Shown: positions 37,963 to 57,006, numbered from the whole stretch's first letter. The stretch is DNA of 57,006 nt, filler included, from Dugesia japonica (GCA_001938525.1; 5 parts of 5 records of this genome joined end to end with filler, not necessarily neighbours in it); one strand, 5' to 3'. Notes: generated by a model from the sequence alone, not told the origin. Numbers and translations: made by a program.

Positions 37963-40900
37963 ATGGTCTTAGTAATAATGTACAATTATGAAATCTGTTT
38001 ATATTTGTATAATTTTTGTATATTCTTCAGTGTATACATAATAAAATTTGTATGGAATTAATGTTATTGATAAAGTACATAATAACTTTAGTGTACAAAG
38101 TTTTATACTTATTTATTATTTTATTGACTATAAGTTATTAGTGTATGTTGTATTGAATCTATTGCATTACTGCTTAATGTTTAGTGATATGTTATGAATT
38201 AATGAAAACGTGTATGTTTTAATAAAAATCAGTCCATTTATATGATATTTGATTAAAATTTTGAGAAATTAATCGCCATTTATGACAATTTCCTATATGA
38301 AGAATGTATATATTAGGTTAATAAGTAATGAAATTGTTATATAAATAAGACAAGCTTGTATACCATTGTTATTTTTCTTCATGAAACTCTTAATTAATCA
38401 GTTAAAACGGTCATATCCAATGAAAACAATTCATGAAATACTCTCATATTCTTTAGGAGTGTTTTTTAAGTAACATAGTGACTAGTAGCAACTGATTATT
38501 TGAGTATCATGACAAATTATTACTTAATAAGCTTATTCAGCTTATATGTTGCATAATTATACATNAAAGTTTTGCCATGCACCCTTTTCAACAAATTATT
38601 TAACCTTTATCATCATCTAACTGCATTTCTGTTTGCTTCTCGGCATACAAATTTCCATTAGTTTTCTTAATTTTTCAATGTTTTATAACTTTCCCAGAGT
38701 TTAGTTAGGTATATAAAAACCCAGTAAATACAGTAAACAAGTGAACAAAGTAAGCAAATAGCTACTGAAAGTCGATCTGATACAGTAAAGCCTATGTGTT
38801 TCAGTAAAATCCATGTGTTTGAGTAAAACCAGTGTAATTTATTAAGTCAATAAATACCACATATAGTACTTAATTGAATCAATTTTTTCAAGTAAATTAT
38901 TCAACTTATTACTAATTTATCAAGTGAATATGCATCAATTCCAATCCCCTATACACTAATTTCATTGAACCATGAATAGATTTAAGACACCTATGCTTAA
39001 ATTACAATTACCTGTGTAAGGATTGTGGGCCTCTATGTGTAAATTGTTACTATCTATTGTACATTGAGACATTAGTTTGTAATATGTAAAAATAGAAATT
39101 TATTTTGATCACAGAATTTTATAAAATTTCTATAGATTTTCATAAAATAATAATAAATATATACTAACTCCATAAGTAATTTCATTAAAATTTTATAGAC
39201 CCCTAATTAAAATAAAGATTAATTTTATTANGATTTGTTAAATGTCCATTAATTTTCTTAAGTTTCATAAATTTTATTAATTTTTCTAAATTAATTAATT
39301 GCATTAAAGTTCATCGATTACAATAGGTTTTATAGTTTTTATTAGAGTTTAGTGGTAGTTTTTACATAGTAGTTCAATGGTTATAGTATATGGATAAATA
39401 AAAACAATAGTTTACCATACGAACATTATAGTACTTTATTAGTAATTATTTTAATTTGATATTTTATAATTTCAGTCAAGATAGTAATCAATTGAGTCAT
39501 TCATTCATCAGATTTTCATTTTTATAAATATTATCTATAAAAATATCTTTGTATCGTTATTTTGTATTTACTTTATTTTTTATATTAATTTTGATATTTT
39601 TTCATTGAGTTATACATTAAAGTACTTGTTTTTCAATTTATTTTACTTAGGATAAATATTGACGATTTTTAATTATGTTATTCGTAATGAGCATAGAAAT
39701 CTCTATCAAATAGATGGTTTATGTTTAAATTAGAGTTACTCTTTCAAAATTCATTATCTCTTCGAGGAGACTCAAAATATATAAACTTGTTTTTCAATAT
39801 AACTTTGTATGTAGAAGGTTTGACGCTTTTAGATGATGATATTGTTAATTACCGTAAAATTCTCTATCTAATAGATAGTTTAATTATATCATTTCAGATA
39901 CTTTTATTTTTACTTAATTATTTAGAATTACAAAATTTAAACTTTTTTCAAAAATAATTTGATTTGACAAATTTTTACCTTATATATTCTTGATCAGTAA
40001 AAATGTCACTATTGAATACTACTAAGATCATTAAATTTGAATGAAAATTATAAAAAATAATTTTTTATTTGTGTCGGTTAAGCATCCGAAACTATAAAGA
40101 TTCCAAAAACATTGTGCGATAACTCGTCAGACGTTCTAGTACACTATGACTTTTTTTTTAGATAGAACGATGCATCCTACACCATAAGTCGTTTAGACAA
40201 TGTATAAATAGAATTTTAATTCTAACGCAACCATATCATAAGGACTTCAAAAAATCAAAAACTGTACAGTGCGATTGAGTGCACTTTCACCTTTGCACAC
40301 ATATAATTTTGCACACAACATCCATCTCCATCAAACCTGCACCAAAATATCCGTCATAACTTCCCAAACACACACACAATACCTACAATACCAAATTTTA
40401 ATGCCCTGAGAACAAAAAAATATAATCATGATCAAAGAAAACCTCTGATCAAAAATATGATCATCCCAAAAATCATTTAAAAAATACACGATAGCCAATA
40501 TCTAATTTATAGAACAGTGTTATTTTTTCTCGCTAGGCTGGGAGGTGTTCCAGTGCGTTTAATAATATTTAGCTGTGTATAGCTTATTGAAATTTATTTA
40601 ATTTTGTATATGAAATTATGAGTCCAATTATTCTCAAAATTTTGTTATACTTAATNNNNNNNNNNNNNNNNNNNNNNNNNNNNNNNNNNNNNNNNNNNNT
40701 TAATTAATTAANNNNNNNNNNNNNNNNNNNNNNNNNNNNNNNNNNNNNNNNNNNNTATTATTATTATTATTATGAAATTTTTTTATAGTAATCGTAAAGG
40801 TTTTTAATTTAATTTTGACAGACATATTTCATTTAGAATATTATGGGATATTTAAAACTTATTAAATCTTTCGCTGCTCCAACCGTAAATATTCGATCCG

Positions 40901-41485
40901 AGCCTGTTAATTCGCGACGTGATTTTAAATTATTCTCTGTTCAACACAACCTTTTTATATCATATGCAACGGAAGTGATGTTTTTGTGCAGTAAAATTAA
41001 AAACTTTCGCACAGCGAGAACGAAATCTCAAAAATCATTGCGCAGTGAAATATATTACTTATATTAAATTATTTTTTTACTCAAATTTTATTTAAAAAAT
41101 ATTATTAAAAATAACTGTCATGATTTGATAAGAAATTAACATTTTATATTTTAATTATTAGTTATAAATATCAAATTATTTTATAAATACACAGATGTAC
41201 CAGCACCAATTATGAAAAGAATTTAATTTTCCGCAGATTTTCTTAGAAATTTTATGGGAATTGAAAACTTAAACGACTCTTCTAAAATTGAAAAAAGAAA
41301 CTAAAACGCCTTCATTTAATATTTTTCATTAATAAATTCATAGAAGTCATTTTTAATGCAGATTCTAACAATTGAATTAAAATAAATCAAATCAATATTT
41401 AAATACTAGCATATAATTGTTATTATTTATCATAAGATCTTTAATTTTCTTTATATTACTACTTTTCCCGTTTTTTTGTTTAAAT

Positions 41486-42392
41486 CAGTGTTTCTTAAAC
41501 TTTTTTTTGAAGATTTGAAATTTTCATGGACCCCGTATTATATTTCTAACTTTTATCTTACAAAATACGTATTTAATATATATTATTGACACTAAAAAAA
41601 TTAAGTTAAATTTTTTGTTTATGAAAATATATTAAAAAAATAACAATCAAAAAACAAAAAGAACCGAATTTTTTTATGAATTATTTTGCATTATTATGCA
41701 TTGTTATGCATTATTTTATTAATTTTATATCAAAAACATAAAACTTTATTTATATCTACTTTTGCTTATCAATTTTGCTGTTGTTGTTTGGTATCTTAAA
41801 AATATCAATGTTTTATTGTTTCTAAGGTAAAGAAAAGGCACGGGATAAAATTTTTGTAATAACAACGACATTAATTAATCAAAATCCTATATTTTTGAAT
41901 TTTTAAAATGTCTTTTTATACAATTTTTAAAATTTTAAAACTTAAAATTGTTTTCTTCAATCAATTTATAGTAATTCTTTTTGATTTTTTTTATGAAAAA
42001 GCAAATAAAAAATTTGAAGAACTGTTAAGGAGACTTAATATTGACGATTTTATTTAGACAATCATAAATCGTTACTATTACTTTTTAGAATTTATGAACG
42101 TCATATGTTGAAAACTGAAAAGGATAAAAACTAAAAAAAAATAATTAACTTTTCAAGTCGTGCCAGAAGGATTGGTCATTCTAAAAACAGGGCACCTAAA
42201 AGAGACTACTATATATGTATTAAATCTGCTAAGCTTGAATTGTCTAATTATAAAATGTACTAAAAATACCAAAACATAATTTATTAGTCACGGACTCCTT
42301 TGAATCCCCTTCTCTGATAAATTCCTCTACGGACCCCCTGAATCAATCAACGGACACTAGGGGGTCCGTACGGACCACTTTGAGAAACACCG
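41486..42392. mobile_element. Non-autonomous hAT (Charlie/Buster-type) element
   Basis: TIRs CAGTGTTTCTTAAA / TTTGAGAAACACCG, 8-bp TSD GTTTAAAT/GTCTAAAT, and subterminal GGACCCC/GGGGTCC motifs. Confidence 0.88.
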
Positions 42393-43699
42393 GTCTAAAT
42401 CATAAGAAATATTATGTTTTTCGGAAATTAACTTCGGTTTTTTATGTCCAGCTGTTATAGTCTTATTTTAAAGCAGTTTTAATTTATTAAATCAATACTC
42501 ATTACGATAATTTAAATATCTAGTTTGATTTTGTTTTAATATATCAAATTATTTTTAGATGGGATATATTTGTAAATGTATGAAATATTTTATTATTTTA
42601 TTAACGAAGAGTTATAGAAAATTTCGGTCAATGTTTGGAGAAACCCAGCACCAATGTCATATTACGTTTTTTATAATGTAGAATTTTAAAGAAAATCTTC
42701 ATTTCAAAGAATATTTTTCCATTTAAAAGAAAACTAAGAAAAATACACATAATTTTAGTGACATAAACGTTTGTATTTTAGAGATATATTTATTAATTTA
42801 TGAATCATGATGATCAATTAATCGGCTGCTAAAGAAGTTCAAATTTTGTATCTATTTTTTATACAGGTATGAAGAAAGATTTCATGGAAAGGTTTCAATG
42901 AATTAAACAGTCAAAATCTGTTGATAAACATTCAATACTCCAGCGCGCATAACGCATAACAAATAGAAGTAATTGATGGACAATTTCTACTTAACGCTAT
43001 GAAATAATTGTTTTAGAATTTCCATAAAATCTATGATATTCAATCAAGAAAAAACGCTTTGTCGTTTTTAATAATTATTTGTTCATTAATAATGACAGAA
43101 AAAAAATGAAATCCAGAAATTGATTTTTTAATGGCGGCATTCATAGATAAATTGGTTATTGTTATTATTGTTTATTAAACTTTGTCAGAAAAAACTAATA
43201 AAACGTTACAAAATAATTAAATTAATTAATCTATTTGGTTAATAAAAAATTTATTTCCTGAAATTTATCATGAGAACCTTTGTCTTTTTTTTAAAAAAAA
43301 TATTTCCAATAATCAATTTTATTTTTTAGAAGATAAATTTCTCGATTAAATTTCATAGAATAAAATAGAAGAGAAAACATGTCTATTATATATTTAAGAC
43401 TAAAATGTTTGTAATTTTAATTTTCTGAACTTTTTTTATTTAAAAATCTTTTTTTAAGTTCAAGAATATCATTTGAAGTAAAAACATATTTCTAGATTTT
43501 CGCACATATCCACCTTCTATTATTTTATATTATTTCAAAATTAATTTCATTTCTTACAAAACAAAAGAACTATTTATGACCAGTTACAATGATTAACACT
43601 TTGTTTTAATATTATTTAGAAATTGTGTTATTTTTAATTATAATAAATATATTATTGAAGAATGATTTTGAAAGTGACTTAACTGGCGACTACGCCGAA

Positions 43700-46355
43700 A
43701 ATGTTAATGTGTTGACATGCCAACAACGAAAATTAATTTTAGAAGCCTTGCCTAAGAATACTCAGGAGCTGATCAATTTTAATATAAAAAATTTGATGGC
43801 AAAGATGCTCCATAGGCAACAGCATAGCTGAAAGAAATCGACGAATGTCTCATTGTGAATGAATTAAGTTTGATAAGAATTTTTGATCTCCTTTTATCAG
43901 ATGAAGCCAGAGTTTTATGGAGAAATTATACGTCGAACAGAATTACGGAAGAAAAGGCAAAAAAGTGGTTTGTAGACACTTTTACAATAAAGAAATCTAT
44001 CACAGAATGATAATAAAGCTTGCAACAGTAAAACAAGAATCAGAAGAGAGATTTGCAACGTTTGAAATACGAGTAAGAAATTTAGATAACTGTGTATTGA
44101 ATTGAGTGTTATGTAATGACGAAATTGTAAATGATTTGCTGACAAAGAAAGTCAGGAATCAAAATTTGCGGGAGACGCATAAAACAAGACCAGAAATGAA
44201 AGTTGCCGAGAGATCTCTGACAAAGATTAATGAAGATAAAGAAATTTCCAACGCTTGCTGGAAATAAAGATATTTACGGAATACATAGAAAAAGCTATTC
44301 AAATGCGTTAAAAGGAGACCGAAGTAGTCATGACAGATGAGCTGAAAACCAGCCATCAATTAATTTTAAAACCAATAATAATGCGAGATATGAAAAAACC
44401 AAGAACGTAAATGTCAACGTATCAGAGAAATTTCAACGAGAGAATGTCACAACCGGTAATTACAGAGAACAGGACACAGAGTTTAAGTAGAAAACCGACT
44501 GTATCGATGAAACATATTGCAAGATGTCATTTTAACAGATGTAGAGGATTACCTGAACCACAAGAAGACAGATTTAGAGAAGGACGATGTTATTGTTGTG
44601 AAGAACATGGATATATGCGTTATCAATGTCCATTAAAAGATATATGTTTGATATTCTGAAAAGCTGGAAACAATTTCTGGCAATACTATCTTGTGCAAAG
44701 TCGATCTAATAGCGGAAATACTAAAATTCTATGCATCCAAGAACAACAAAAGGTGCAAACTGACGAAGATTAAAGCTTTGAAATGCATAATATTGTCAAA
44801 GGAAAAAACCAGAACAATTCCGTTGCATACATTTCGTCAGTGAAATTAGTTTAAGAAGGGATAACCCAAATCGAAATAATGAGGACAGAAGAAGGATGTA
44901 TGAAAAAGAAGACGGGAGAGAGTGGAGCAGAGTAGACGTGAATGGAGTAAAATTGGAAATGTTGTTAGATTCGGTAGCATCGATTACAGTTATGAGCGAA
45001 GAGTACTGGTTGAAGGTAGGAAAACCATCCTTGTTATGTTGCAAGGTAATATTAAATGGGGTATTTTCAAGCAGTGAAGAGAAGCCGTTAGGATGTGTAT
45101 AACTGAGCGTTAAATGGAATAATAAAGTGAGAGTTATTAAAATCGTAATAGTTAAAAAGATACGACCACGATTTATTGGTGGGATAGATGCAATGAAAAG
45201 TTTGGGAATAAAACTGATAAAAGTTAATAACATTGAAACTGAATGTTTGGGAAAAAACCATTCAAATGATGATAGAAAGAATTACGCATTAAATGTCTTC
45301 AAAAAACCAATAACAAAGATTTAAATGATCTAATTTCAAAGTTTGGTGAAATATTCATGGTGTCTAAGTTTGTTATAGGATAAAAAAAACAAGTAATACA
45401 TGAAATAAAAGTATTTGAAGATCTAATTGTTCAACATCCCCGGAGACAACCGAGATAATCAATGCACTTGGAAAAGAAGATTGACGAAATGATATAGAAC
45501 TTAATAGGTATTGGGGTAATTAGCAAATGTAAAAGTCCGTGTAATTCACCTTTAGTAATTATTGGGTAAAAAGATGGTTCGATAAGAATGTGTGTAGATT
45601 ATTGACAACTGAATATGATGACTGAAAAAGTTTCATTTCCGATGCCAGACATCCAGTTATTATTGGATTGCTTAGCAGGTGCAAAATATTTTCTTCAATT
45701 GATCTAGGACAAGCTTACTATTAGGTAGAACTATCAGAAAGCTCGAGAGATGTTACGGCGTTTAGTACAAAAGAGGGTCAATATTAGGTTCAATTGGATT
45801 CCATTTGGGTTAGCAACTGCATCTGCAACGTTTCAAAAGTTGATGCATGATATGTTGGCAGGGGTAATTTTTAAAGGTGTCATTGTGTATCTAGATGATA
45901 TATTAATGTATGAAAGAACGGTCGAAGATCATAATGAAATTTTGAAAGAAGTTTTTAACAGAATAAGAGAATCAGCATTGAGAATAAATCCAAAAGAATT
46001 TTAATTTTATCAAAAACAACTGGTCTTTTTGGGACACGCAATAAGTGCAGAAGGAATAAAATATACGAAACGAAGATTCAGGAAATAAAAAATGCCAAAT
46101 AACTTAAATGTTCATCTAAACTCAGATCTTTTCTTGGCTTAACGAATTACTATAGATATTTTGTCAAGAATTACGCCAGAATTGAAACACCTTTATACGA
46201 AGCTATTTTAGAATGTGACAAAACCTTGATGTGAAGAGAAGCACGCAGAAAAAGTTTTGAAAACTTAAAAGACAAGTTATGTAATGCACCAATTCTAGAT
46301 TACCCAAGAGAAAAAAGAATGTTTATCCTAGATACTGATGCATGTTTCCGAGCTA
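43700..46355 (+). pseudogene. gypsy gag-pol (zinc knuckle, protease, RT, RNase H N-terminus)
   Basis: CYCCEEHGYMRYQC; MLLDSVAS; RMCVDY; IPFGLATASATFQ; VYLDDIL (YLDD 45888-45899); FILDTDA, interrupted at 46355. Confidence 0.92.
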
Positions 46356-46490
46356 GGTAGATGTAAAATGACGGTTTCCACGCAAGGTTGTACCCTACGC
46401 TTGTAAATGCATCGGTTTACTTTCGTAATTATAAATAGTAAAATAGAATAGGGTAAATAATCGCGTGGAAACTGTCATTTTACATCTACT
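46356..46490. repeat. 135-bp terminal fold-back with (A/G)GTAG...CTACT ends
   Basis: GGTAGATGTAAAATGACGGTTTCCACGC (46356-46383) versus reverse complement of 46463-46490, AGTAGATGTAAAATGACAGTTTCCACGC (26/28 match). It starts exactly where gypsy RNase H breaks. Confidence 0.9.
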
Positions 46491-46555
46491 TAAGGTATTG
46501 TTTTGATTTTTGAATTTGGATTTTTTAAAGTATAATTAAATTTTTAAATAATAAA

Positions 46556-46795
46556 ATGAAAGAATATACTTGTAATAATTGTAAAGAAAAATTTGATGGG
46601 AAAGCAAAATTATATGAACATTTAGATAGAAATCGTTTTGACTTAAACTATTATAAAAATGTTTTAACTTATGAATGGCATTGTGGTTATTGTGATAAAA
46701 AATTAAAGATTAGTAAAAATAAATTTAAAAAACATAAAAAATTATGTCTTATAAATAAATTTAAACAAATAAAATTATACAAAAGAATAAATTGA
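46556..46795 (+). CDS. Small zinc-finger protein (79 aa)
   Basis: Open ORF with YTCNNCKEKF...LYEHL and WHCGYCDK...KKHKKLC. Confidence 0.65.
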   Translation: MKEYTCNNCKEKFDGKAKLYEHLDRNRFDLNYYKNVLTYEWHCGYCDKKLKISKNKFKKHKKLCLINKFKQIKLYKRIN

Positions 46796-46985
46796 AGATA
46801 TTCATAAATATTATATTAAAAGTTTTATATATATGAGCAATCATGTATATTATAAAAAATAATTTTTGTTATTATTAAGGTTCTGATTAGGTTTCGATTA
46901 TATTCAGTTAAGGTTCTGATTAGGTTCTATATGATTTTGTTCAGTTAAGGTACTGTATGATTCTGTAAAAACTTTTATTAATAAA

Positions 46986-47318
46986 ATGGTTAGTCAAGAA
47001 ATAACGCAAAATAATTTTTATAAAGTCTTAAAAAGTTATAATTTTATGGAAAATTCTGTCACAGGTTTTTGTAAACAAAATAATGTAGATGATAAAATAG
47101 TAATAAAATATTTAAGAGAATTTAATATTCCTTATAATAGAAAAAAGCATATTAAATTTTCAGAAAGAGATGTTAATGGTCAATATAAATCTTTAATAAA
47201 ACGATTTGATAAAAACCCAACGGACCCCATAAACAAACACAAAATCAAAATCCCAACGAGGCCCATTCTACCAGAGCAATTCAAAATCCAAAACCCAAAA
47301 TCGATTATCATAAAATGA
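46986..47318 (+). CDS. Orphan basic protein (110 aa), conserved with 580-802
   Basis: Open ORF with an AAAATG start; a homolog follows the other fold-back in this window. Confidence 0.7.
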   Translation: MVSQEITQNNFYKVLKSYNFMENSVTGFCKQNNVDDKIVIKYLREFNIPYNRKKHIKFSERDVNGQYKSLIKRFDKNPTDPINKHKIKIPTRPILPEQFKIQNPKSIIIK

Positions 47319-48045
47319 GTGATTTAGATTTTCTAAAAGTTGTTGAAAATACTATTCGAAAGAAATTANAGAATTTTATTTTTTCACTAAAGAAAATGGT
47401 TAGTAAAAAAACCAATGTTAATAAAATAGAAGAAGACTTGGGTATAAATACTTTATATGCCAGCATGAATAATAATTTTTCTAAACTTGAAAATTTTAGA
47501 ATTAGTGAAATTGAAAAATTTATCAATTATGAAATTACAAATAAAACAGCAAAAAAATATTTAACAATTTTAAAAGAAATGTATTTACAACTTGAAACCT
47601 TTAATGATAATGATAAGTTCAAAACATTATTAAGTATTATGGTTTCCAAATTTTGTGAAGCAGAATGTAAAGGGAAATTAATAACTCACTGTTCTAAAGA
47701 AGATGCAAAAATGTAGAAATTATAAAACAATTGGAAAGAGATTATCAAAAAGAAAGAGATGAATGTAATAAATTAAGAGAACAATTAAATTTAGAACAAA
47801 AACCAAACTTTATTGAATATCCAGGTTTGAATCTTTCATTAATAAAATGGGAAGATGAAGATGCAATTATTTCAAATCAGGATTGTATAAATTTTGCTAA
47901 AAAAATAAAAGAAAATAGTGATAATTTACGTGAAAGATTAACAAGAGTAAAAGTACCAGAAGAATATGAATATGATGTAAAAAGAGTTTATGTAGCCAAA
48001 AATGATTTACCAAATTATGAAGTAAAAACTTCCAATTCTAAATAA
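47315..48045 (+). pseudogene. Orphan ORF (47315-47716 plus in-register continuation 47731-48045 after a break)
   Basis: ATG overlaps the stop of the previous ORF; K/E/N-rich coding-like composition; no recognised motif. Confidence 0.45.
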
Positions 48046-48074
48046 ATTATTTTGTTATTTTTTGTCTTTAGAAA

Positions 48075-49385
48075 ATGGAGCTACGCAACATAATAGAAAC
48101 AAAACTTGATCTTGACAGTGATATTAATTTCCAACATTTATTTTTGAAAAATTCAATTAATCATTTAATGTTCTCTGGAGATATAGTTTTTCAATCTTTA
48201 CAATCTTCAAATCCATTAGACATTTCTTATTCAATGTTGTAGTATATAATAGAGATAAATGTAACAGATGAAAAAAAATAACTTTGGAAAATAAGTGGTT
48301 TCCAAGTTTATTCAAAACAATGAGATTAACTTTAGGATTTTCGGATGTAGAAATAATTCATGATCCAGGAATAAAATCAACAATATTAAATTTTATAACA
48401 ACCACTTCAACTTGTAAAAATATTTATTGTGAATCATCTGGATGGATTCCAGACACAAACAACGGAGATTTAGATGTAGAAGGTCTTGATGCAAATTTAG
48501 GTTTTTATAAAAGAAATAAACCTTTTAACTCAAAAAAGAAGTTTGTGGGTTGTTTTCCATTAAAATATTTATTTGGATTTATGCAATGCTACAATAGATT
48601 GTTTTATATAATACAAAGATTAAATTTATATGTAACAGACAAATTTATGATAAATTATTATTTTACGGTGATAAAAATAAAACAGCAACTTTAAAATTAA
48701 CAACTTTAGAATTATATTTACGAGAATGTAGATTATTACCAAAAATGGAAGTAAATCTGTTGGAAAGAATTTATTCAAATAAATCTATTCAAGTTTCGCT
48801 TTTAAATAGAATTACTTCAAGTACAACTTTAGATTCTGGAAATAAGTATTTACTTAAACTGAGTAATTTAGTTTATAAACCAAAATATATATTTATGGTA
48901 ATAAAGATGAAGGTATTTCTTATCAAAAGAATAATAATTTATTTATTCAAAGAATATCAAAAACTGTAAAGAAAAAAGTAGGAACTGAAGAAAAAGAAGA
49001 AACTACTTACCAAGCTCTCAAAAGTATTCAAATTTAATTAAATAATACATATTATCCAATAAATGAATGTAAATTTAATATTGATGATAATGATATGATT
49101 TTCCCGTATTTAAATTATATAAAATGTTGTAAAGACTTTTTCAATGAATCTCAGTTATCATTACAAGAGTTTGGAAATTTATACCCGATCTTTTGTTTTG
49201 ATGTTTGTTCCCAAGATGATAAATTAAATATTAATACTGTTGATGTAACTTTACATATAACTAAAGATCCTGGTTTAAAAGGAAGTTTGTGTTGGTGTAT
49301 TTTAGAAGAAAAACATATATAAATGAAATTATCAGATAGTAAAATTGTAATGGTTGAAAATACACGAGGAGAAAAATTAGTTTAA
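48075..49385 (+). pseudogene. Divergent Polinton-like double jelly-roll major capsid protein
   Basis: About 435 codons across frameshifts: NKWFPSLFKTMRL...VEIIHDPGI.STI; FPLKYLFGF; KPKYIF; LNNTYYP; F..LYPIFCFDV..Q. Confidence 0.75.
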
Positions 49386-49599
49386 TATTTGGACTGCGCA
49401 AGTAATCCCCAAATTCTCTAATTAGATTTTAAATAAAATGGATAATAAAAGTGTTTGTAAAAATTGAAATAAAATATTACTTAAGAAAAAATAAACCAAG
49501 ATATTTACGAATTTGTTTAAAGCGAGAGCGAGAGCAAGCTAGTGGTGATCGCGAAGCTCCTTCCAGTCACGAGCAAAAGCGAGCTCAAGCCGTAGGCGA

Positions 49600-49930
49600 C
49601 ATACAATCTTCTAAATTAACTTCTGCAATTTTAAAACCATTTACTTGGGAAAAATATCCGGGTGAAAGACATTTGTTTAAACATAACTATACTAGTCCAG
49701 GAACAAGATTAAATTTAAGATTAGACGAAAATAATAATCCTAAACCTGGAGAAGAACCAATTAATAGAGTAGTTGAAGCTGCTTTAAAACATGATTTTTT
49801 TTAGAAAATCTGAAGATTTAAGAGATTCATGATTTGAATAATTTTCCAAATCCAACTTCTTCTGAAAAAATACAAAGAGCTCTTGTAAAATTAGCAATGA
49901 AAGGTAAAATCGTCGCCGGAGGCTCCTTGA
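49600..49930 (+). pseudogene. Parvovirus-type phospholipase A2 domain (adintovirus PLA2X-like)
   Basis: PGERHLFKHNYTSPGTRL..RL...PINRVVEAALKHD, i.e. the YxGPG Ca-loop and DxxAxxHD motifs, each with one substitution. Confidence 0.85.
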
Positions 49931-49984
49931 TCGAAGGGATTCTTTTAGGTGCTGGTGTAAGCTCAAATACAGATTTAAATTTAA

Positions 49985-50782
49985 AAAATAAAGAAATACT
50001 ATCAAATGAATTACTTAAAGATTATAGAAAACCAAAACATTTTCTCAAAGTAATAATAAAATAAAAAGATAATACTTGAGGCTGTGATATTTTTGATATG
50101 GTTAAAAAATCAACCGAGGGTTATAGATATATTTTAGTTTGCATTGATTTATATTCTAGATATGGTTTTTGTGTATCAATAAAAAATAAAAATCAAGAAT
50201 CTTTACGAGACGCTTATGAAAATATATGTGAAGAAAATAATAGAATTCATGATTATATTTGGTTTGATAAAGAATCGGCAATTAGATTAAAATACTTTGA
50301 TAAATTCCTTAAAGAAAATGAAATTAATTTGTATCACACTGAAAACGAAGGTAAATCAGTTTTTGCTGAAACATTTATTAGGACTTTAAAAACTAAAATT
50401 TGGAAATACTTTACTCTAGTCGGAAACCAAAAAGGGAATAATAATTTATTACAAAGAATTGTAAACGAATTAAATATAACATTAATGTAACTCCAAAAGA
50501 AGCTAGTGAAAATTCTGAGAAAATAAAAGAAATAATCGAAGATCACAACCATGAAAATGATAACTTTAGTTTTAAACCGAAATTTAAAATTGGAGAAAGA
50601 GTTAGAATCTTTAAATATAAATATAAATTTGAAAAAGGTTTTACAGCCAAATGGACAAATGAAATATTTGTTGTAACCCAAGTATATAATACAAAACCAA
50701 TAACATATGGAATTACAGTTTTAGAAAATGAAAAGATTTTGGGTAGATTTTATAGTAATGAATTAAAAAAAACTGTTTTATA
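49985..50782 (+). pseudogene. Polinton-type rve integrase
   Basis: LSNELLK; W.CDIFDM; GYRYILVCIDLYSRY; IWFDKES; KSVFAETFIRTLK; PKFKIGERVRI; FEKGFTAKWTNEIF; GRFYSNEL. Confidence 0.92.
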
Positions 50783-50806
50783 AATTTAAAATTAATAAAT
50801 TTAAAA

Positions 50807-51199
50807 ATGAATTACAATTCTTTCAATTTTATTTTAAAAGATGCTCTAAATGAAGAATCAAAAAATCTTTTAAAAGAAGAAATTAAACAAGAATTTAAAA
50901 ATGAATTAGAAGAAAATAATCATTTAAAGAAATCACTAGCGGCTGTAAATTTCAAAAATCCACCTGAATTATTTTGGAAGTGGATAACTATATATAAACC
51001 TAATGATGAAAGAGGTAAATCCTTGTCAGATGAAGAAATAGATGAAGAAATTAATACAATAATCAACTATATTAAAAATTTTAACTTTACTGATATGGAT
51101 ACATATAGTATAGGTATTTTAAATTTAATAGTAAATAAAATAAATGATCCACACACAAAAAGAAGAATGATTTCCAATATGAAGGACCATATCATATAA
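50807..51199 (+). CDS. Orphan ORF; the last ~10 codons come from the junction with gypsy sequence
   Basis: 130-aa open frame after INT. From ~51175 another frame encodes the gypsy GPY motif. Confidence 0.45.
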   Translation: MNYNSFNFILKDALNEESKNLLKEEIKQEFKNELEENNHLKKSLAAVNFKNPPELFWKWITIYKPNDERGKSLSDEEIDEEINTIINYIKNFNFTDMDTYSIGILNLIVNKINDPHTKRRMISNMKDHII

Positions 51200-51470
51200 T
51201 GAAGTTCATATCAGATCGGCAAGTAGAAATTCAATTTCCTCACAGTTCAAAGTACAGACGAATAGAATGGCTAAAGACGTGGAAAGCATTTAGAAGAGAG
51301 GGAGAATTACAATGATTAACACTTTGTTTTAATATTATTTAGAAATTGTCTAATTTTGAATTATAATAAATATATATATATGAAGACTGATTTTGAAAGT
51401 AATATAAATTGACAAAAAACTTTTATAATTTAATAATAATAATATAATTAGAATTATATATACATATATA

Positions 51471-51555
51471 CAGAAGAACCTTTCTATAACGTCAAACCTC
51501 ATTATAGCGTCACTCAGTTATAGTACCGATAGGTGGTTTAAAGGAGATTCGACTG
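51471..51555. mobile_element. Short pogo/Tigger-like MITE
   Basis: TA-CAGAAGAACCT...AGATTCGACTG-TA. Confidence 0.55.
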
Positions 51556-51565
51556 TATATATATA

Positions 51566-52388
51566 CAGTTAAACCTGTCTATAAGAAACACTAGAATTGA
51601 CAAAATACAACTTGTTTGCTAAAGAGGTATAAGAAACAATTATGTAAGAACTTTTATTATCCAATGAAATTACAATACGGTTTTACTTCCTAATTATGTA
51701 ATCAAGCATTGTAAGACTTTGTGAATTTCTCTCCGACAATAGTTCATCTTTGACTTTGTATATTATGTTCAATATTTATTGAATATTTTTCAGAAAACCT
51801 TTTCTAATTTTTGAAATGATAAATATGGATCATATTGAGTTATATCGTCATTTTCAGAGGTCAAATTCTGCATTGACTCATTTAAAGAGTTATTATCAAC
51901 TAAATCTGAAATTCATGTATTAATGTTTGAAATGAAGTCATCATTGTCATATTCCAATGAATCATATTGCGTAAAGTCATTATGATAGCTGTTACAAATA
52001 CTTAGGTCTGTATAATCGATATGTGCGTTTTTGAAAGAATGGTTGAAAGATTTATTAATTACCTCAGTAGAAACTGCGTATATCATTTTAACATTTTCAA
52101 CTAAAGATTCGTAATCAGTATTTGTGATTTCAGATTCAAAAATTAAATTTGGTGACTGAATCTTTTTATAATGCTGCTTAAAAGACCAAATTACACCTTG
52201 ATCTAATGCCTGAATTTTGGAAGAAGTTTTTGGTGGTATGTACAATATATCAATATTGGAAAACTCAATCCACACAGGATAGACTGGTGCATTATCAATA
52301 ATCAAAAAAATTTTCCTTTGGTCTTTAATTAAAGACTGATTGAAAGTTTTCAACCAATGGATATTTCAAAAATATCTAAAGTCATCCA
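51566..52388 (-). mobile_element. pogo/Tigger (CENP-B-like DDE_1) transposon, 3' half
   Basis: WMT, LIIDNAP, YIPPKTSSKIQALDQGVIWSFK. TIR TA-CAGTTAAACCT at 51566. Truncated at 52389 by an AGTAG-terminated element. Confidence 0.9.
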
Positions 52389-52389
52389 G

Positions 52390-53830
52390 AGTAGGTAGAA
52401 ATAAGCGCACTGGCACAACCCCCCCAGAGACAGAAAATTTTTTGCGGTGAAAGAATATACATGTACTTAGTGGAACGATAATATGTGTGCATATGATTAC
52501 GTAATATTGGTATATGAATTTTATGTGTATTTAGCGGTACGATTAAAATAGATAAGATGTGTGCACGTGATTACGTAATCGTGGCTTAAGATTTTTACAT
52601 GTATTTAGCGAGAAAGATTTGATTACGTAACTGTTGCGCGTTTTTTGTATGTGCCTAGTTAAATCTTTTTTGTTTACGATTATATTATTTTTATTTATTC
52701 ATTTATTTTTTGATGAGTCAAATGCATTAAACTAAATTTAGTTTTTAAATTGATAGTTATTTATTATTTATTGTTTAAACGAGGTTAAATTATTTATATT
52801 TTATTTGAATTAAGTGAAATTAATTATTTTTATTTAAATTAAACAAAATAATGATTTTTTTAAAGTAAATTAGTTGAAATTAATTATTTTTGTTTAAATT
52901 AAAAGAAATTAACTANTTTTTAAGTTAAATTTCCCTCGAGGAATATTAAGATTAGTCAAGCAGTTCCATATTAATATAAACATTAGATGCTCCATCGAAC
53001 CGACATAATATTGACGTTAATACCCTCCGAGCTACCATAATATTGATATTAACATTAATTTTCTCAGGGCTGACAATATATTAACATTAATATCCGCTGA
53101 GCAGACATAATAATAACCTTGATATCNNNNNNNNNNNNNNNNNNNNNNNNNNNNNNNNNNNNNNNNNNNNNNNNNNNNNNNNNNNNNNNNNNNNNNNNNN
53201 NNNACCTACAAAGAAATTACATAAAAGTCACTAAATATTTTTTAAAAAATGCATAGAAGTAACTAAATATTTTAAGAAAATGCAAAGAAGTCAATAAATA
53301 TTCTATAAATTGCATAGAAGTCACGAAATACTTTAAGAAAATGCATGGAAATCCCTAAATATTTTATGACATTTCAAAGAGATCACTAAATAATTCATAA
53401 AATTGCTTAGGAATCATTAAAATCTTTAAGAAATTGAATAGAAGTATTTGGAAATGTATAGAAATGAAATTGATGTACAGGAAAATTAACCAATAATTCT
53501 TAGAAGTTATTAATAACTTAATAAAAGATATGTAGTGTATTGAATATTCAATGATAAAACCAAAACTTTCATTATAAAAACTAATATTTTATTGGTAAAG
53601 CCAGTATTTTCATGATTAAACCCCTGTATTTNATAAAACCCATATTTTCATGATAAAAACATTGTTTCCATGATAAATCCTATATTTACCACCACCAAAC
53701 CGACATTTTCATGATAAAACCCCTGTTTTTGTTAATGAAATCATAAATTTATCTATTGAAACTAATAATTTCAATATTGAGATCAATAATTTTAATGATA
53801 AGATTAGTATTTTCAATGTTAAGTATAATT
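52390..53830 (+). mobile_element. Left end of a non-coding Polinton-TIR-like element with minisatellites
   Basis: AGTAGGTAGAAATAAGCGCACTGGCACAACCCCCC start, three GATTACGTAA, ~32-bp TAATATTGATATTAA repeats, ~32-bp GCATAGAAGTCACTAAATA repeats and TTTCATGATAAAAC repeats. Confidence 0.6.
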
Positions 53831-54916
53831 TATAAACTTCGGCAATCATAAATCATCACATTATTTCGAAACACAAATTTTAAAATGGGAAAAAAGATCC
53901 ACAATATGAATGCAACCTGATGTTTAACTTAATTATTTAGTGTGGCATTTCCAATTTAAAATCTGTAACTAACTAATAATTTTTTCCCCTATAGAATTTA
54001 ATTTGGTAATGAAATGGTTAAATTAATTTTCCCATTAAAGAAAAGATTGGTTAAATGAAAAATCTGAGAGCAAGCTTTGCACATCTAAACAACTTTTTTT
54101 GATTAAATCAATTTTTTTGATTAGTTAAAATAATGATTAAAAATATCCATTAAATTTGCTAGTAAATCGCAGTCAATCTCAACGATATAAACGATAGTAA
54201 ATTGGCCAACTTCATGAACTTAAATGTTTATTACAAAATTTATGACTAAATTCTTTTCCATCTGTTATAAAAGAATTTTAAAATTTANTAACGATCCACC
54301 AGTAAAATGAAATAAAACAACTCATTAAAATCAACACATGTTTAAGAAAAGAATCAAATAAATCAACTTTAATGACAAATATTTTCAAAAAATAACCGTC
54401 AATTAATTTTACATGAAAAAAAAGTCAGATAAAAATTATTTCAATTTGAATTTCAGATCCCATAGGAGTTTGGAAAGGCATTAAAATTCATATTTTCAAT
54501 TATTGAATTATAAAATATTTCCATTTTTTTTTGATGTTAAATCTCTAAATTACTAATTGTTAATTAATAATTAATAAGAAAAATATGTATATGAAATTAT
54601 TTTTAACCAAGTTGAATGCCATGGGAATTAAATCTTAAATGCGGTCTTTTTGAAATTAAAATTCTTAAAATTTACGTTTTTTGAAATTAATCTTTTTTTA
54701 CACTCGAATTTCTACCAATACTTGACATTAAATCTATACAACTATGGTAATAATGCTTTTATTTTGTATATATAAATATACCATATATATGTTTGTAGAT
54801 CTATAAATATAATTACATATACATATATTCAAACAGTTAAAATTAAATATTTAATATATATATATANNNNNNNNNNNNNNNNNNNNNNNNNNNNNNNNNN
54901 NNNNNNNNNNNNNNNN

Positions 54917-55182
54917 ATTTTACATCTGACATCTAACATCTGACATCTTACATTTCGGGATTATAATCCAGATTATATTTTTGGTTTGAAGGGTACACCT
55001 GATGCTAAAAACGTATTTTACCTATTACTTACATTTTACATTTTCATCTGATATTTTACATTTTTATTATGAGATTTTTACATTTTATTCTAACATCTTA
55101 CATCTTGGGATTATAATCTGGATTATACTTTGGGTTTGAAGGGTACACCCTTGATGCTAAAAAGTATATTTCCCATTACTTA
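54917..55182. repeat. Tandem duplication, period ~150 bp
   Basis: GGGATTATAATC..GATTATA...GGTTTGAAGGGTACACC..GATGCTAAAAA occurs at ~54957 and ~55107. Confidence 0.85.
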
Positions 55183-57006
55183 TATACATATATATATATA
55201 TATATTTATAAATGGAATTTAATTGTAATTAATTATTAATTATAAAACTTATGATTTATTAAATGATTCGAAAAACGATTAGAGAAAAATAAATCGCCAA
55301 AAGATCGATTGTTAATAAGTAAAAAATTAGTTAGTATGCAATATAAAAGAATAAAACAACAACAAAAGTAGATAATCTGGAAATAAATAAATTAATTAGC
55401 TAAAATAACTATTTGCTTGTTAATAGAAATTTTGTGTTTTACTCTTGTGAAGCATACATAACTCTGGTGAAGAACAATTTTTTTTTATCATAAGTATTTA
55501 TTAACTAAATTACAAGGTTTCTAAATAAATTTTTCAATAATAAATTTTCAGCAAATTCAATAAATTTTTTAACTAAAATGAACTTATAATTGACAAATAA
55601 TAAAAATTACACTTTAAAATTTATAAAGGAAACAATATTACCTTGCTAAATTTCCAAAATAAAATACTTCCAGATAAAACTTTTTGACCAAGATTTATTT
55701 TTCAAATTTAACCCATTACAAAAAACTGACTATAATATTTTAACAAAATCTAAAAATTCCTATTTCTAATTAATCCTCACAACTCTAACTCTTCTATACA
55801 CAATAGAATAATTTTATTGTAAAATGAATACTTATTGAGATAACTTCTTAAAAGCAAGTTTGCAAAATTTCGAAAGACAGAAGTTTCATTTTCGGCTATC
55901 AAACAACAAAATTATTTAATAGTAGAAACTAGAAACGCTAAATACTAGTAAGACAATACTGAAAAAATAATACGCGTAAAGTTATTTCACGGATTTTACG
56001 ATTTCATTATTTGTGATGCCTAATATAGTCAGTGAATATTGTTTAATGATTTTTTATCAGAAATATGCATATGCTCATTGTTTGGTTTATGTGATTGGTC
56101 AAGTTGTGAATATTAAATAAAATATATTAATATTGAATGTTAATAGTCAATAATGAATGCAGAAAATAATTCTAAAATAACCTTGAAATATTAAACAGAA
56201 TTCAAAAAATCGTAATGTGAATTGTGATAAAATATTTTAATTTCAGTAGAGATTGTAATTTTTCGTGTAATCAAAAATTTTGTACATTATAATTTTGATA
56301 AAACGTTTTGATGAAATTGTAGAAAGTTAATGAAAATACCGCTAACAAGTATATTGTTGATCGATTAAAGTTTCTTTAAACAAACTTTAATCACAACTAA
56401 ATGAACACAGTGAGCGTAATTGATGTGTTAATAGATTTTATTTTAATTAATTCATATTTGCAGAGTTATCTGAAATTAAAATTTTAGCTATTTGAAGAAG
56501 TGTATGAAAATGATTTCAGAAGTCAGTAGTTAAGGGAATAGTTTGTAGGAACCGTCCATTGACAAATTAATTTATTGATATCTTCAGGGGGTCGAAAAGT
56601 GAGAAAGAAAGTGTACAAATATTTAAATAAGACAAAGTTTATGGATGATAGAATAGCAGAGACGATTATTACTTNTTACTGTTTTACTTCAAAATATCAT
56701 TTATAGTTATTATAGTTGTTAAAGCTATTTTTGAATTTTGTTTAATAAATTATGTGTGAAACTTATAGTGCTCTTAATGAAAATATATTGTCTTCGAACA
56801 AATTCCTTAGGAAAATGGTAATTGTAATTGACATTCTTAAAAGAAACTCAAGATCTATAAGAAAATAGTTTTTAAAATTAAATATGGTTAAGATAGTATA
56901 AAGTTTTAAATTTAAAAAGTTTAAACATTTTTTTTAAGTCAATCGACTTTCAGATTCCTTTTCTGGACACCTTAATCCAAAAGAAACCTGGCGAATTATT
57001 ACTTAC

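What the first reader, a model, noticed from the sequence alone, without database searches (positions are those of the whole stretch)
46356..51170. Polinton-like virus cassette headed by a 135-bp AGTAG...CTACT fold-back: candidate undescribed element class
Seen: the insert starts exactly at a 28-bp inverted repeat enclosing a 79-bp spacer. A unidirectional array follows: ZnF, orphan ORFs, MCP, PLA2, integrase, orphan ORF. The same terminal design occurs at 867-999 (arm sequence homologous, AGTAGATG..AAATG.C.G.TTCCA) and at 5658-5782. Known: Polintons end in 5'-AG simple-repeat TIRs, and PLA2-bearing relatives are called alpha adintoviruses. I do not know of a described family in which one end carries two opposed copies of the terminus. 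Inference: the unit is either (a) a hairpin telomere or self-priming origin, or (b) an LTR-like direct terminal repeat bounded by integrase att sites. No pPolB, ATPase or protease is present in the surviving 4.8 kb, but the right end is lost.
Basis: partly seen in the sequence, partly recalled or inferred. Interest (0 to 1): 0.9.

Follow-up and report, generated by a model that had tools for sequence, protein, structure and literature searches.

The report
Dead Maverick-like provirus, fold-back end
A decayed, half-deleted copy of a Maverick/Polinton-type DNA virus lies inside an old retrotransposon. Its one surviving end is a real 135-base fold-back, an end design with one recent published precedent and no proven role.

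Summary
A 28-bp inverted repeat with a 79-bp spacer (46356-46490) sits exactly where a Ty3/gypsy pol gene breaks off. It folds far better than shuffles (z = -8.7). Behind it runs a one-strand, tightly packed gene array.

The capsid call is right: the gene at 48075-49379 covers full-length double-jelly-roll capsid relatives (Pfam PF21738), and a relative's model matches solved capsids of that fold. The PLA2 call is right: all 13 relatives carry the parvovirus-type PLA2 domain. The integrase call is right: it matches rve. PLA2 and integrase share one reading frame here and in one relative.

The capsid and PLA2-integrase genes are pseudogenes. The right part of the insert was deleted together with more than 1 kb of the gypsy element. 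No polymerase, ATPase, protease or penton survives.

The arms begin with a Maverick-type 5'-AG(T) end motif, so the unit is most likely the true left terminus. "Undescribed class" is not supported. The genes place it among Maverick/Polinton/adintovirus-like viruses, and a 2026 preprint already describes terminal palindromes at such ends with a hairpin-priming model.

I could not test hairpin, LTR-like or MITE readings. The host is unknown, so I referred the fetching of relatives' DNA.

The parts
46354..46492 (.). Terminal fold-back unit. The outer arm is at the host junction and an opposed inner arm lies 79 bp inward. Both arms begin with a Maverick-type AG(T) end motif. The interior holds a further 7-bp stem.
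   Evidence: end motif compared with PMC8097293
46556..46795 (+). ORF of 79 codons with two Cys2-His/Cys zinc-finger-like motifs. It is open.
   Evidence: Pfam C2H2 models E 0.009-0.05, below cut-off
46875..46962 (.). Two exact 19-nt direct repeats 33 bp apart, plus a degenerate third copy, between the zinc-finger ORF and the next ORF. Possibly a protein-binding or regulatory array (inference).
46986..47318 (+). Orphan ORF of 110 codons, open. A low-confidence model shows three N-terminal helices, which hints at a helix-turn-helix. Its stop overlaps the start of the next ORF.
47315..47716 (+). Orphan ORF of 133 codons, open, with one masked base.
   Evidence: DUF4143 E 1e-4, below cut-off
47731..48045 (+). 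Orphan open frame of 104 codons with no in-frame ATG. It may belong to the preceding ORF. This cannot be tested without relatives.
48075..49379 (+). Major capsid protein gene (double jelly roll, Pfam PF21738 family). It is a full-length pseudogene with 3 frameshifts and 3-4 in-frame stops.
   Evidence: fold of relative P0002
49433..50783 (+). PLA2-integrase reading frame, broken. It holds a parvovirus-type PLA2 domain (about 49670-49930), a linker, an rve catalytic core (Pfam match about 50110-50340) and a C-terminal part of about 100 codons. Minimum breaks: 2 frameshifts, 2 in-frame stops and 1 short deletion of about 8-9 codons.
50807..51150 (+). Orphan ORF cut at its 3' end by the deletion junction. 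The open frame runs on into gypsy sequence.
43584..43675 (+). 5' LTR of the host Ty3/gypsy-like element, followed by a TGG-start primer-binding-site-like stretch.
   Evidence: D4; 88 of 92 matches between the LTRs
43676..46353 (+). Gypsy gag / protease / reverse transcriptase / start of RNase H. Heavily decayed, with at least a dozen stops and frameshifts.
   Evidence: (RVT_1 E 5e-13; aspartyl protease E 5e-4)
51151..51306 (+). Tail of the gypsy integrase and a polypurine tract. The rest of RNase H and the integrase core (more than 1 kb) is missing.
51307..51400 (+). 3' LTR of the gypsy element.

Best explanation
The stretch 46354 to about 51150 is the left 4.8 kb of an endogenous Maverick/Polinton-type (adintovirus-like) double-stranded DNA virus. 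Its own retroviral-type integrase inserted it into the pol gene of a Ty3/gypsy retrotransposon. A later deletion removed the right part of the virus together with more than 1 kb of gypsy pol. What remains has decayed.

Shown:
- the nested anatomy;
- a full-length but broken double-jelly-roll capsid gene;
- a broken gene that joins a parvovirus-type PLA2 domain to an rve integrase;
- a compact one-strand gene array.

The 135-bp fold-back is the true left terminus. Its outer arm abuts the host junction and begins with the 5'-AG(T) motif at which Maverick integrases work.

Inferred:
- The outer arm is the integrase end-site.
- The inner, opposed copy makes the end a terminal palindrome of the kind recently reported at PLV and virophage ends.

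Of the roles for the inner arm, I rank a snap-back (hairpin-capable) end slightly above an LTR-like self-contained terminal repeat. Neither is shown. The confidence given is for the core claim (a dead, truncated Maverick-like provirus whose true left terminus is the fold-back), not for any role of the inner arm.
For: Anatomy:
- LTR pair with 88 of 92 matches, a PBS-like and a PPT-like stretch, and RVT_1 at E 5e-13.
- G+C steps 0.325 / 0.235 / 0.276 across the junctions.

Capsid:
- phmmer of one piece found 42 proteins among 1.84e9, with full-length relatives of 408-450 aa. Nine of the ten I scanned match PF21738.
- The window gene covers residues 11-430 of 431 of the best relative at 50% identity.
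- The AlphaFold model of relative P0002 has pLDDT 87.5. It matches the capsids of grouper iridovirus, PBCV-1, faustovirus, mavirus and Sputnik at E about 1e-15.

PLA2:
- 13 relatives at E 1e-25 to 1e-7, all with PF08398.
- The window piece keeps all 15 invariant columns, including the His-Asp pair.

Integrase: PF00665 at E 1e-7.

Shared PLA2-integrase frame: relative P0170 aligns colinearly from the PLA2 domain into the start of the integrase.

Terminus:
-.
- Arms begin AGGTAGA and AAGTAGA, against the published (AGT)2 / (AG)3 Maverick end motifs (PMC8097293).
- Terminal palindromes with rve integrases are reported in bioRxiv 10.64898/2026.07.28.741278.
Against: - Only one copy and one end are available, so recurrence of the unit, its orientation at the far end and the target-site duplication are unknown.
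- No polymerase, ATPase, protease or penton is present, so membership of the Polinton kind rests on three genes.
- The dinucleotide TA flanks the unit on both sides, as a Tc1/mariner-type miniature element would show.
- The stem is only 28 bp, with a 79-nt mostly unpaired interior. This is unlike the nearly complete palindromes of parvoviruses or the 52-nt palindromes of the preprint.
- The host organism is unknown.
Confidence: 0.65

Rival explanations
1. Hairpin telomere. After release, the terminal 135 nt snaps back and the paired 3' end primes copying of the genome without a protein-primed polymerase. This is the model proposed for Halocafeteria virophages and PLV subtype 4.
For: - Strong fold.
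- The palindrome sits at the very extremity, next to host DNA.
- An rve integrase is present and no pPolB is found in the surviving part.
- Precedent and model: bioRxiv 10.64898/2026.07.28.741278.
Against: - The missing right part could have carried a pPolB.
- The stem is short relative to the 79-nt interior.
- The capsid is of the double-jelly-roll dsDNA type, and most such integrating elements use protein priming.
- No second copy is available to look for two spacer orientations.
Confidence: 0.25
2. LTR-like unit. The element is bounded by two direct copies of the 135-bp unit. Each unit needs the integrase site at both of its edges, so that the two outermost edges of the element are inverted copies of one another.
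For: - It explains why one end carries two opposed copies of the terminus.
- The integrase is of the retroviral type.
- Both arms carry the AG(T) end motif.
Against: - No far end is available to inspect.
- No DNA virus of this kind with direct terminal repeats is known to me.
- Mavericks and PLVs described so far have inverted terminal repeats (PMC8097293, PMC11296320).
Confidence: 0.2
3. An independent miniature inverted-repeat element. It is either derived from Maverick ends or of the Tc1/mariner type, and merely happens to lie between the gypsy sequence and the virus remnant.
For: - The unit looks like a complete mini-element: 135 bp, non-coding, with outward-facing ends.
- TA stands on both sides.
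Against: - It would have to sit exactly at the junction of two unrelated sequences.
- Gypsy sequence does not resume to its right.
- No 6-bp duplication flanks it.
- The two TA dinucleotides also extend the inverted repeat itself, and TA is common at 23% G+C.
- No other copy lies in the 16 kb.
Confidence: 0.1
4. A one-off rearrangement of this dead copy, with no function. Examples are snap-back repair at a broken end or a local inverted duplication.
For: - The preprint's authors name accidental annealing at single-strand breaks as an alternative explanation for terminal palindromes.
- This locus has clearly suffered a large deletion.
Against: - The arms end precisely at the host junction and carry the family's end motif.
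- The 2 differences in 30 positions are in line with the 4 in 92 between the LTRs, so the duplication is not recent.
Confidence: 0.1

Closest known systems
Mavericks / Polintons (Polintoviricetes)
   Same: - rve integrase.
- Double-jelly-roll capsid gene.
- Compact gene array.
- 5'-AG(T) end motif.
- Integrated in a host genome and mostly found decayed, as 96% of vertebrate loci are (PMC8097293).
   Different: - No pPolB, ATPase, protease or penton in what survives.
- The gene order capsid, PLA2, integrase.
- PLA2 and integrase share one frame.
- The end is a 135-bp fold-back instead of a plain inverted repeat of 46-1447 bp.
Alpha (Mayetiola-class) adintovirus virion module (PMC8502044)
   Same: - A PLA2-like gene of the parvovirus VP1 type next to the capsid gene.
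- An integrase.
- Inverted terminal repeats.
   Different: - The capsid is related only at fold level (identity at or below 15% to every viral model).
- The published PLA2 gene ends in a pX-like domain, whereas here it runs into the integrase.
- An animal host is not established.
Terminal palindromes of Halocafeteria seosinensis virophages and PLV subtype 4 (bioRxiv 10.64898/2026.07.28.741278)
   Same: - A palindrome at the extremity of the element, next to the host junction.
- Association with rve integrases.
- No pPolB seen.
   Different: - There, 52-nt palindromes stand at both ends of complete elements, with named non-pPolB replicases.
- Here, one end only, a 28-bp stem with a 79-nt interior, and no replicase of any kind.
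Entomopoxvirus-associated PLVs (PMC11296320)
   Same: - PLA2 of the parvovirus type.
- Divergent capsids that profile searches nearly miss.
- Sets of inverted repeats near the integration and replication module.
   Different: - Those elements use tyrosine recombinase or no known integrase, and a primase-helicase.
- Their repeats are read as abutting terminal repeats, with the outer ends facing each other. Here the outer ends face outwards.
Parvovirus / bidnavirus ends
   Same: - Fold-back at a genome end.
- PLA2 domain in a virion protein.
   Different: - The capsid here is a double jelly roll, not a single one.
- No Rep/NS1.
- The unit is not a near-complete palindrome.

Membership tests
Polinton / Maverick | Retroviral-type (rve) integrase | tested here: met
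   PF00665 at E 1e-7, 32.6 bits, equal to the cut-off. By reading, Asp, Asp and Glu are present with the last two 35 apart.
Polinton / Maverick | Double-jelly-roll major capsid protein | tested here: met
Polinton / Maverick | Protein-primed family B DNA polymerase | tested here: not met
   No Pfam match in any ORF piece of either strand of the surviving 4.8 kb. The deleted right part cannot be judged.
Polinton / Maverick | Packaging ATPase, maturation protease, penton protein | tested here: not met
   Same scans. They may have lain in the deleted part.
Polinton / Maverick | Terminal inverted repeats at both ends | tested here: inconclusive
   Only the left end survives. No third copy of the arm lies in the piece.
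Polinton / Maverick | 5'-AG / AGT end motif | tested here: met
   Arms begin AGGTAGA and AAGTAGA, against (AGT)2 and (AG)3 in PMC8097293.
Polinton / Maverick | 6-bp target-site duplication | not testable with these tools
   The right end is deleted.
Alpha adintovirus | PLA2-like virion protein gene | tested here: met
   The window piece alone scores E 0.14-0.16. All 13 relatives carry PF08398, and the nine I rescanned score E 1e-8 to 1e-14.
Alpha adintovirus | pX-like C-terminal domain on the PLA2 protein | tested here: inconclusive
   The tail piece has no Pfam match. It is a Gly/Ala-rich hydrophobic stretch that runs on into the integrase.
Alpha adintovirus | Adenovirus-like hexon and penton recognisable by sequence | tested here: inconclusive
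   Only fold-level likeness. A protein of 'Adintovirus sp.' is one of many double-jelly-roll matches.
Alpha adintovirus | Animal host | not testable with these tools
   Host not identified. Relatives come from soil and other metagenomes, and from Lottia gigantea.
PLV / virophage with terminal palindromes | Palindrome at the extremity, next to host DNA | tested here: met
PLV / virophage with terminal palindromes | Same palindrome at both ends; non-pPolB replicase | not testable with these tools
   The right end and any replicase are missing.
Parvovirus-type hairpin genome | Near-complete terminal palindrome, Rep/NS1, single-jelly-roll capsid | tested here: not met
   28-bp stem with a 79-nt interior, no Rep and a double-jelly-roll capsid.
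Miniature inverted-repeat element | Own target-site duplication | tested here: inconclusive
   TA stands on both sides but also extends the repeat. The flanking hexamers do not match.
Miniature inverted-repeat element | Many dispersed solitary copies | not testable with these tools
   The host genome is not at hand. None lies elsewhere in the piece.
Ty3/gypsy LTR retrotransposon (the host element) | LTR pair, PBS/PPT, gag-protease-RT-RNase H-integrase order | tested here: met
   RNase H and integrase are largely deleted.

The most novel reading that the evidence does not exclude
The fold-back is the conserved terminal module of a still undescribed lineage of AT-rich Maverick-like viruses, so far seen only as unannotated metagenome contigs. 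These viruses would carry PLA2 fused to the integrase and would lack a protein-primed polymerase. The end would either copy itself by snap-back priming or act as an LTR-like direct repeat. If so, the single protist report of terminal palindromes would extend to another branch of eukaryotes and to a different capsid family.
Probability: 0.2. Interest if true: 0.7.

Novelty: new member of a known kind. Interest (0 to 1): 0.38.

Why it matters
If the terminal unit proves to be a family trait, it would be a second, independent case of palindromic ends in integrase-bearing capsid-encoding elements. It would then bear on how such viruses copy their ends without a protein-primed polymerase.

The shared PLA2-integrase frame is a small oddity. 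It hints that the integrase may travel in the particle on a membrane-active protein.

As it stands, the locus is a dead fragment. Its main value is as a marker of a poorly sampled capsid lineage: only 42 proteins matched the capsid piece among 1.84 billion representatives.

Tried and rejected
Searches that gave nothing:
- Rfam and tRNA scans of the piece.
- PHROGs on ten pieces.
- PDB sequence searches with the PLA2 piece, the integrase piece and two orphan ORFs.
- Exact look-ups of two of the window's own ORFs to learn the host; neither is on record.
- A protein search with the neighbouring pogo-like transposase piece to learn the host. This spent one of the three searches for no gain.

Low-value results:
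- A single-sequence AlphaFold model of the 110-codon ORF reached only pLDDT 59, and its fold search had nothing below E = 2.

Ideas considered and dropped:
- Ciliate code: TAA, TAG and TGA all end ORFs here.
- The integrase belongs to the gypsy element: it has its own C-terminal part and stop, its G+C matches the insert, and the gypsy integrase tail lies further right.
- The fold-back is a circle junction of two abutting terminal repeats: the outer ends face outwards, not towards each other.
- The label 'src' means the window's own genome: it is the soil reference catalogue.

Full report
**Setting.** The piece (40756-57006) is 23% G+C. It has no tRNA or Rfam match and no recognisable host gene. 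It is a graveyard of mobile elements.

**The host retroelement.** A Ty3/gypsy-like LTR retrotransposon spans 43584-51400.
- Two short LTRs (43584-43675 and 51307-51400) share 88 of 92 aligned positions.
- A TGG-start primer-binding-like stretch follows the left LTR. A purine run precedes the right one.
- Between them lie decayed gag, protease and reverse-transcriptase frames (RVT_1 at E 5e-13, aspartyl protease at E 5e-4) and the first residues of RNase H.
- At about 46353 the retroelement breaks off. It resumes at about 51151 with only the last 50 or so codons of its integrase.
- More than 1 kb of its pol gene is therefore missing.

**The observation.**
- The arms are 46354-46397 and 46449-46492. 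The core is 28 bp with a 79-bp spacer, and the arms differ at 2 of their first 30 positions.
- The DNA fold is -33.9 kcal/mol, with z = -8.7 against 200 shuffles.
- The 27-nt arm occurs only at these two places in the piece. A shorter, looser pattern adds only a chance-level match.
- The outer arm starts within 3 bp of the point where gypsy coding sequence stops, and where G+C falls from 0.325 to 0.235.
- Both arms open with AG followed by GTAGA or with AAGTAGA. That is close to the (AGT)2 and (AG)3 end motifs of vertebrate Mavericks (PMC8097293).

**The genes.** All are on the + strand and closely packed, and one stop overlaps the next start. Because the genes are broken, I searched their open pieces apart and joined nothing.

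- **Capsid.**
  - Two pieces gave weak, colinear matches to the N- and C-terminal parts of Pfam PF21738, a double jelly-roll-like domain.
  - phmmer of one piece against 1.84 billion representatives found only 42 proteins, with full-length ones of 408-450 aa. Nine of the ten I scanned match PF21738 at E 1e-12 to 1e-31.
  - tblastn shows that the window gene (48075-49379) covers residues 11-430 of 431 of its best relative at 50% identity.
  - An AlphaFold model of relative P0002, built with an 18-sequence alignment, reached pLDDT 87.5. It matches the solved capsids of grouper iridovirus, PBCV-1, faustovirus, mavirus and Sputnik at E about 1e-15.
  - Against predicted viral structures it matches giant-virus, adomavirus, adintovirus, 'MELD virus' and virophage capsids, all at 15% identity or less.
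  - The gene is a pseudogene, with 3 frameshifts and 3-4 in-frame stops against five relatives.

- **PLA2.**
  - The window piece alone is only suggestive (PF08398 at E 0.14-0.16).
  - Its 13 relatives (E 1e-25 to 1e-7) all carry PF08398. The nine I rescanned score E 1e-8 to 1e-14.
  - In the 13-sequence alignment the window piece keeps all 15 invariant columns, including the His-Asp pair. It departs at 2 of the nearly invariant ones.

- **Integrase.**
  - PF00665 at E 1e-7, exactly at Pfam's cut-off.

- **PLA2 and integrase together.**
  - The tail of the PLA2 domain, a linker and the stretch before the integrase core lie in one frame with no start codon between them.
  - Relative P0170 shows the same continuity. 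Its alignment to the window runs from 49619 to 50142.
  - Most other relatives end as stand-alone PLA2 proteins of 132-204 aa.
  - Minimum breaks in this frame are 2 frameshifts, 2 in-frame stops and one short deletion of about 8-9 codons (and reading).

- **Other ORFs.**
  - The zinc-finger call is weak.
  - The three orphan ORFs between it and the capsid gene, and the one after the integrase, have no significant match anywhere.
  - The last ORF runs into gypsy sequence, so it is cut.
  - No polymerase, ATPase, protease or penton is present on either strand.

**Relatives and host.**
- Capsid and PLA2 relatives come from ENA and JGI metagenomes, Logan assemblies and the soil reference catalogue (runs SRR5438093 and SRR5829696). 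Their contigs are 1-20 kb.
- The closest relatives are rich in the amino acids that A+T-rich codons encode (Phe, Tyr, Met, Ile, Asn, Lys: 0.40-0.43 of residues), like the window.
- One capsid relative and one PLA2 relative both sit on a 7375-bp ENA contig. This is probably the same contig, which would make the adjacency a family trait (inference).
- The only named relatives are at least 9 paralogues in the limpet Lottia gigantea, at about 31% identity.
- I could not identify the host of the window.
- A gypsy element without a chromodomain, the mollusc relatives and the adintovirus-type PLA2 lean towards an animal. The soil relatives would equally fit a fungus or a protist.

**What it is.** It is a dead, right-truncated endogenous virus of the Maverick/Polinton/adintovirus kind, nested in a retrotransposon. 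Its left end is intact.
- The likeliest history is integration by its own integrase, then a deletion that took its right part and the adjoining gypsy pol, then decay.
- The decay is comparable to the 4% divergence between the LTRs.

**What the fold-back does.**
- Shown: it is the boundary, and each arm carries a Maverick-type end.
- Not shown: any role of the inner arm.
- A 2026 preprint on Halocafeteria seosinensis reports palindromes at the extremities of virophages and one PLV subtype, next to the target-site duplications. They are associated with rve integrases and non-pPolB replicases. The authors propose hairpin-primed replication and name accidental annealing as the alternative (bioRxiv 10.64898/2026.07.28.741278).
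- A miniature element is less likely. It would have to lie exactly between two unrelated sequences, and no 6-bp duplication flanks it, although TA stands on both sides.
- With one copy and one end I cannot separate these readings.

- I did not fetch the DNA of contigs that encode relatives, did not scan collections with the arm sequence, and did not collect other copies.
- I built no consensus and read no broken gene through.

1. Searches printed the bounds of open stretches in the PLA2-integrase region and in the gypsy element, and my notes give the bounds of the searched pieces. Both amount to places of stops. I did not repeat this in later scripts or in this report.
2. Note 3 holds a short motif string taken from the PLA2 alignment, which I should have given as counts.

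Noticed in passing
window 43584-51400: The host of the insert is itself a decayed Ty3/gypsy-like element. It has unusually short LTRs of about 92 bp (96% identical) and no chromodomain after the integrase tail.
   Followed up: yes
window 51913-52353 (-): Fragment of a pogo/Tigger-type transposase (DDE_1, E 5e-12). A protein search with it found no relatives of similar length.
   Followed up: partly
window 46875-46962: Two exact 19-nt direct repeats 33 bp apart, plus a degenerate third, in the gap between the first two ORFs of the insert. They look like an array of binding sites.
   Followed up: partly
window 53213-53463: Satellite-like array of about eight 31-bp units (74-80% alike). A run of N lies just before it (about 53120-53210).
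   Followed up: no
window 52477-52637: A 60-nt sequence repeated at 74-bp spacing (82% alike), plus a third partial copy. Each has a palindromic TGATTACGTAAT-like core.
   Followed up: no
window 54939-55149: Two 61-nt direct repeats 150 bp apart (89% alike). Further short repeat families lie at 53586-53822.
   Followed up: no
proteins P0161, P0162, P0164, P0167, P0168: Several PLA2 relatives carry an N-terminal zinc finger (C2H2-like or DUF5679, E 1e-13). In the window a zinc-finger ORF stands alone at the head of the array.
   Followed up: partly
proteins P0099, P0176-P0183: The limpet Lottia gigantea encodes at least nine paralogues of a distant relative of this capsid (about 31% identity), annotated as hypothetical proteins.
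   Followed up: partly
window 47315-48045: The fourth open frame has no in-frame ATG and lies 14 nt after the third in another frame. The two may be one broken gene.
   Followed up: no
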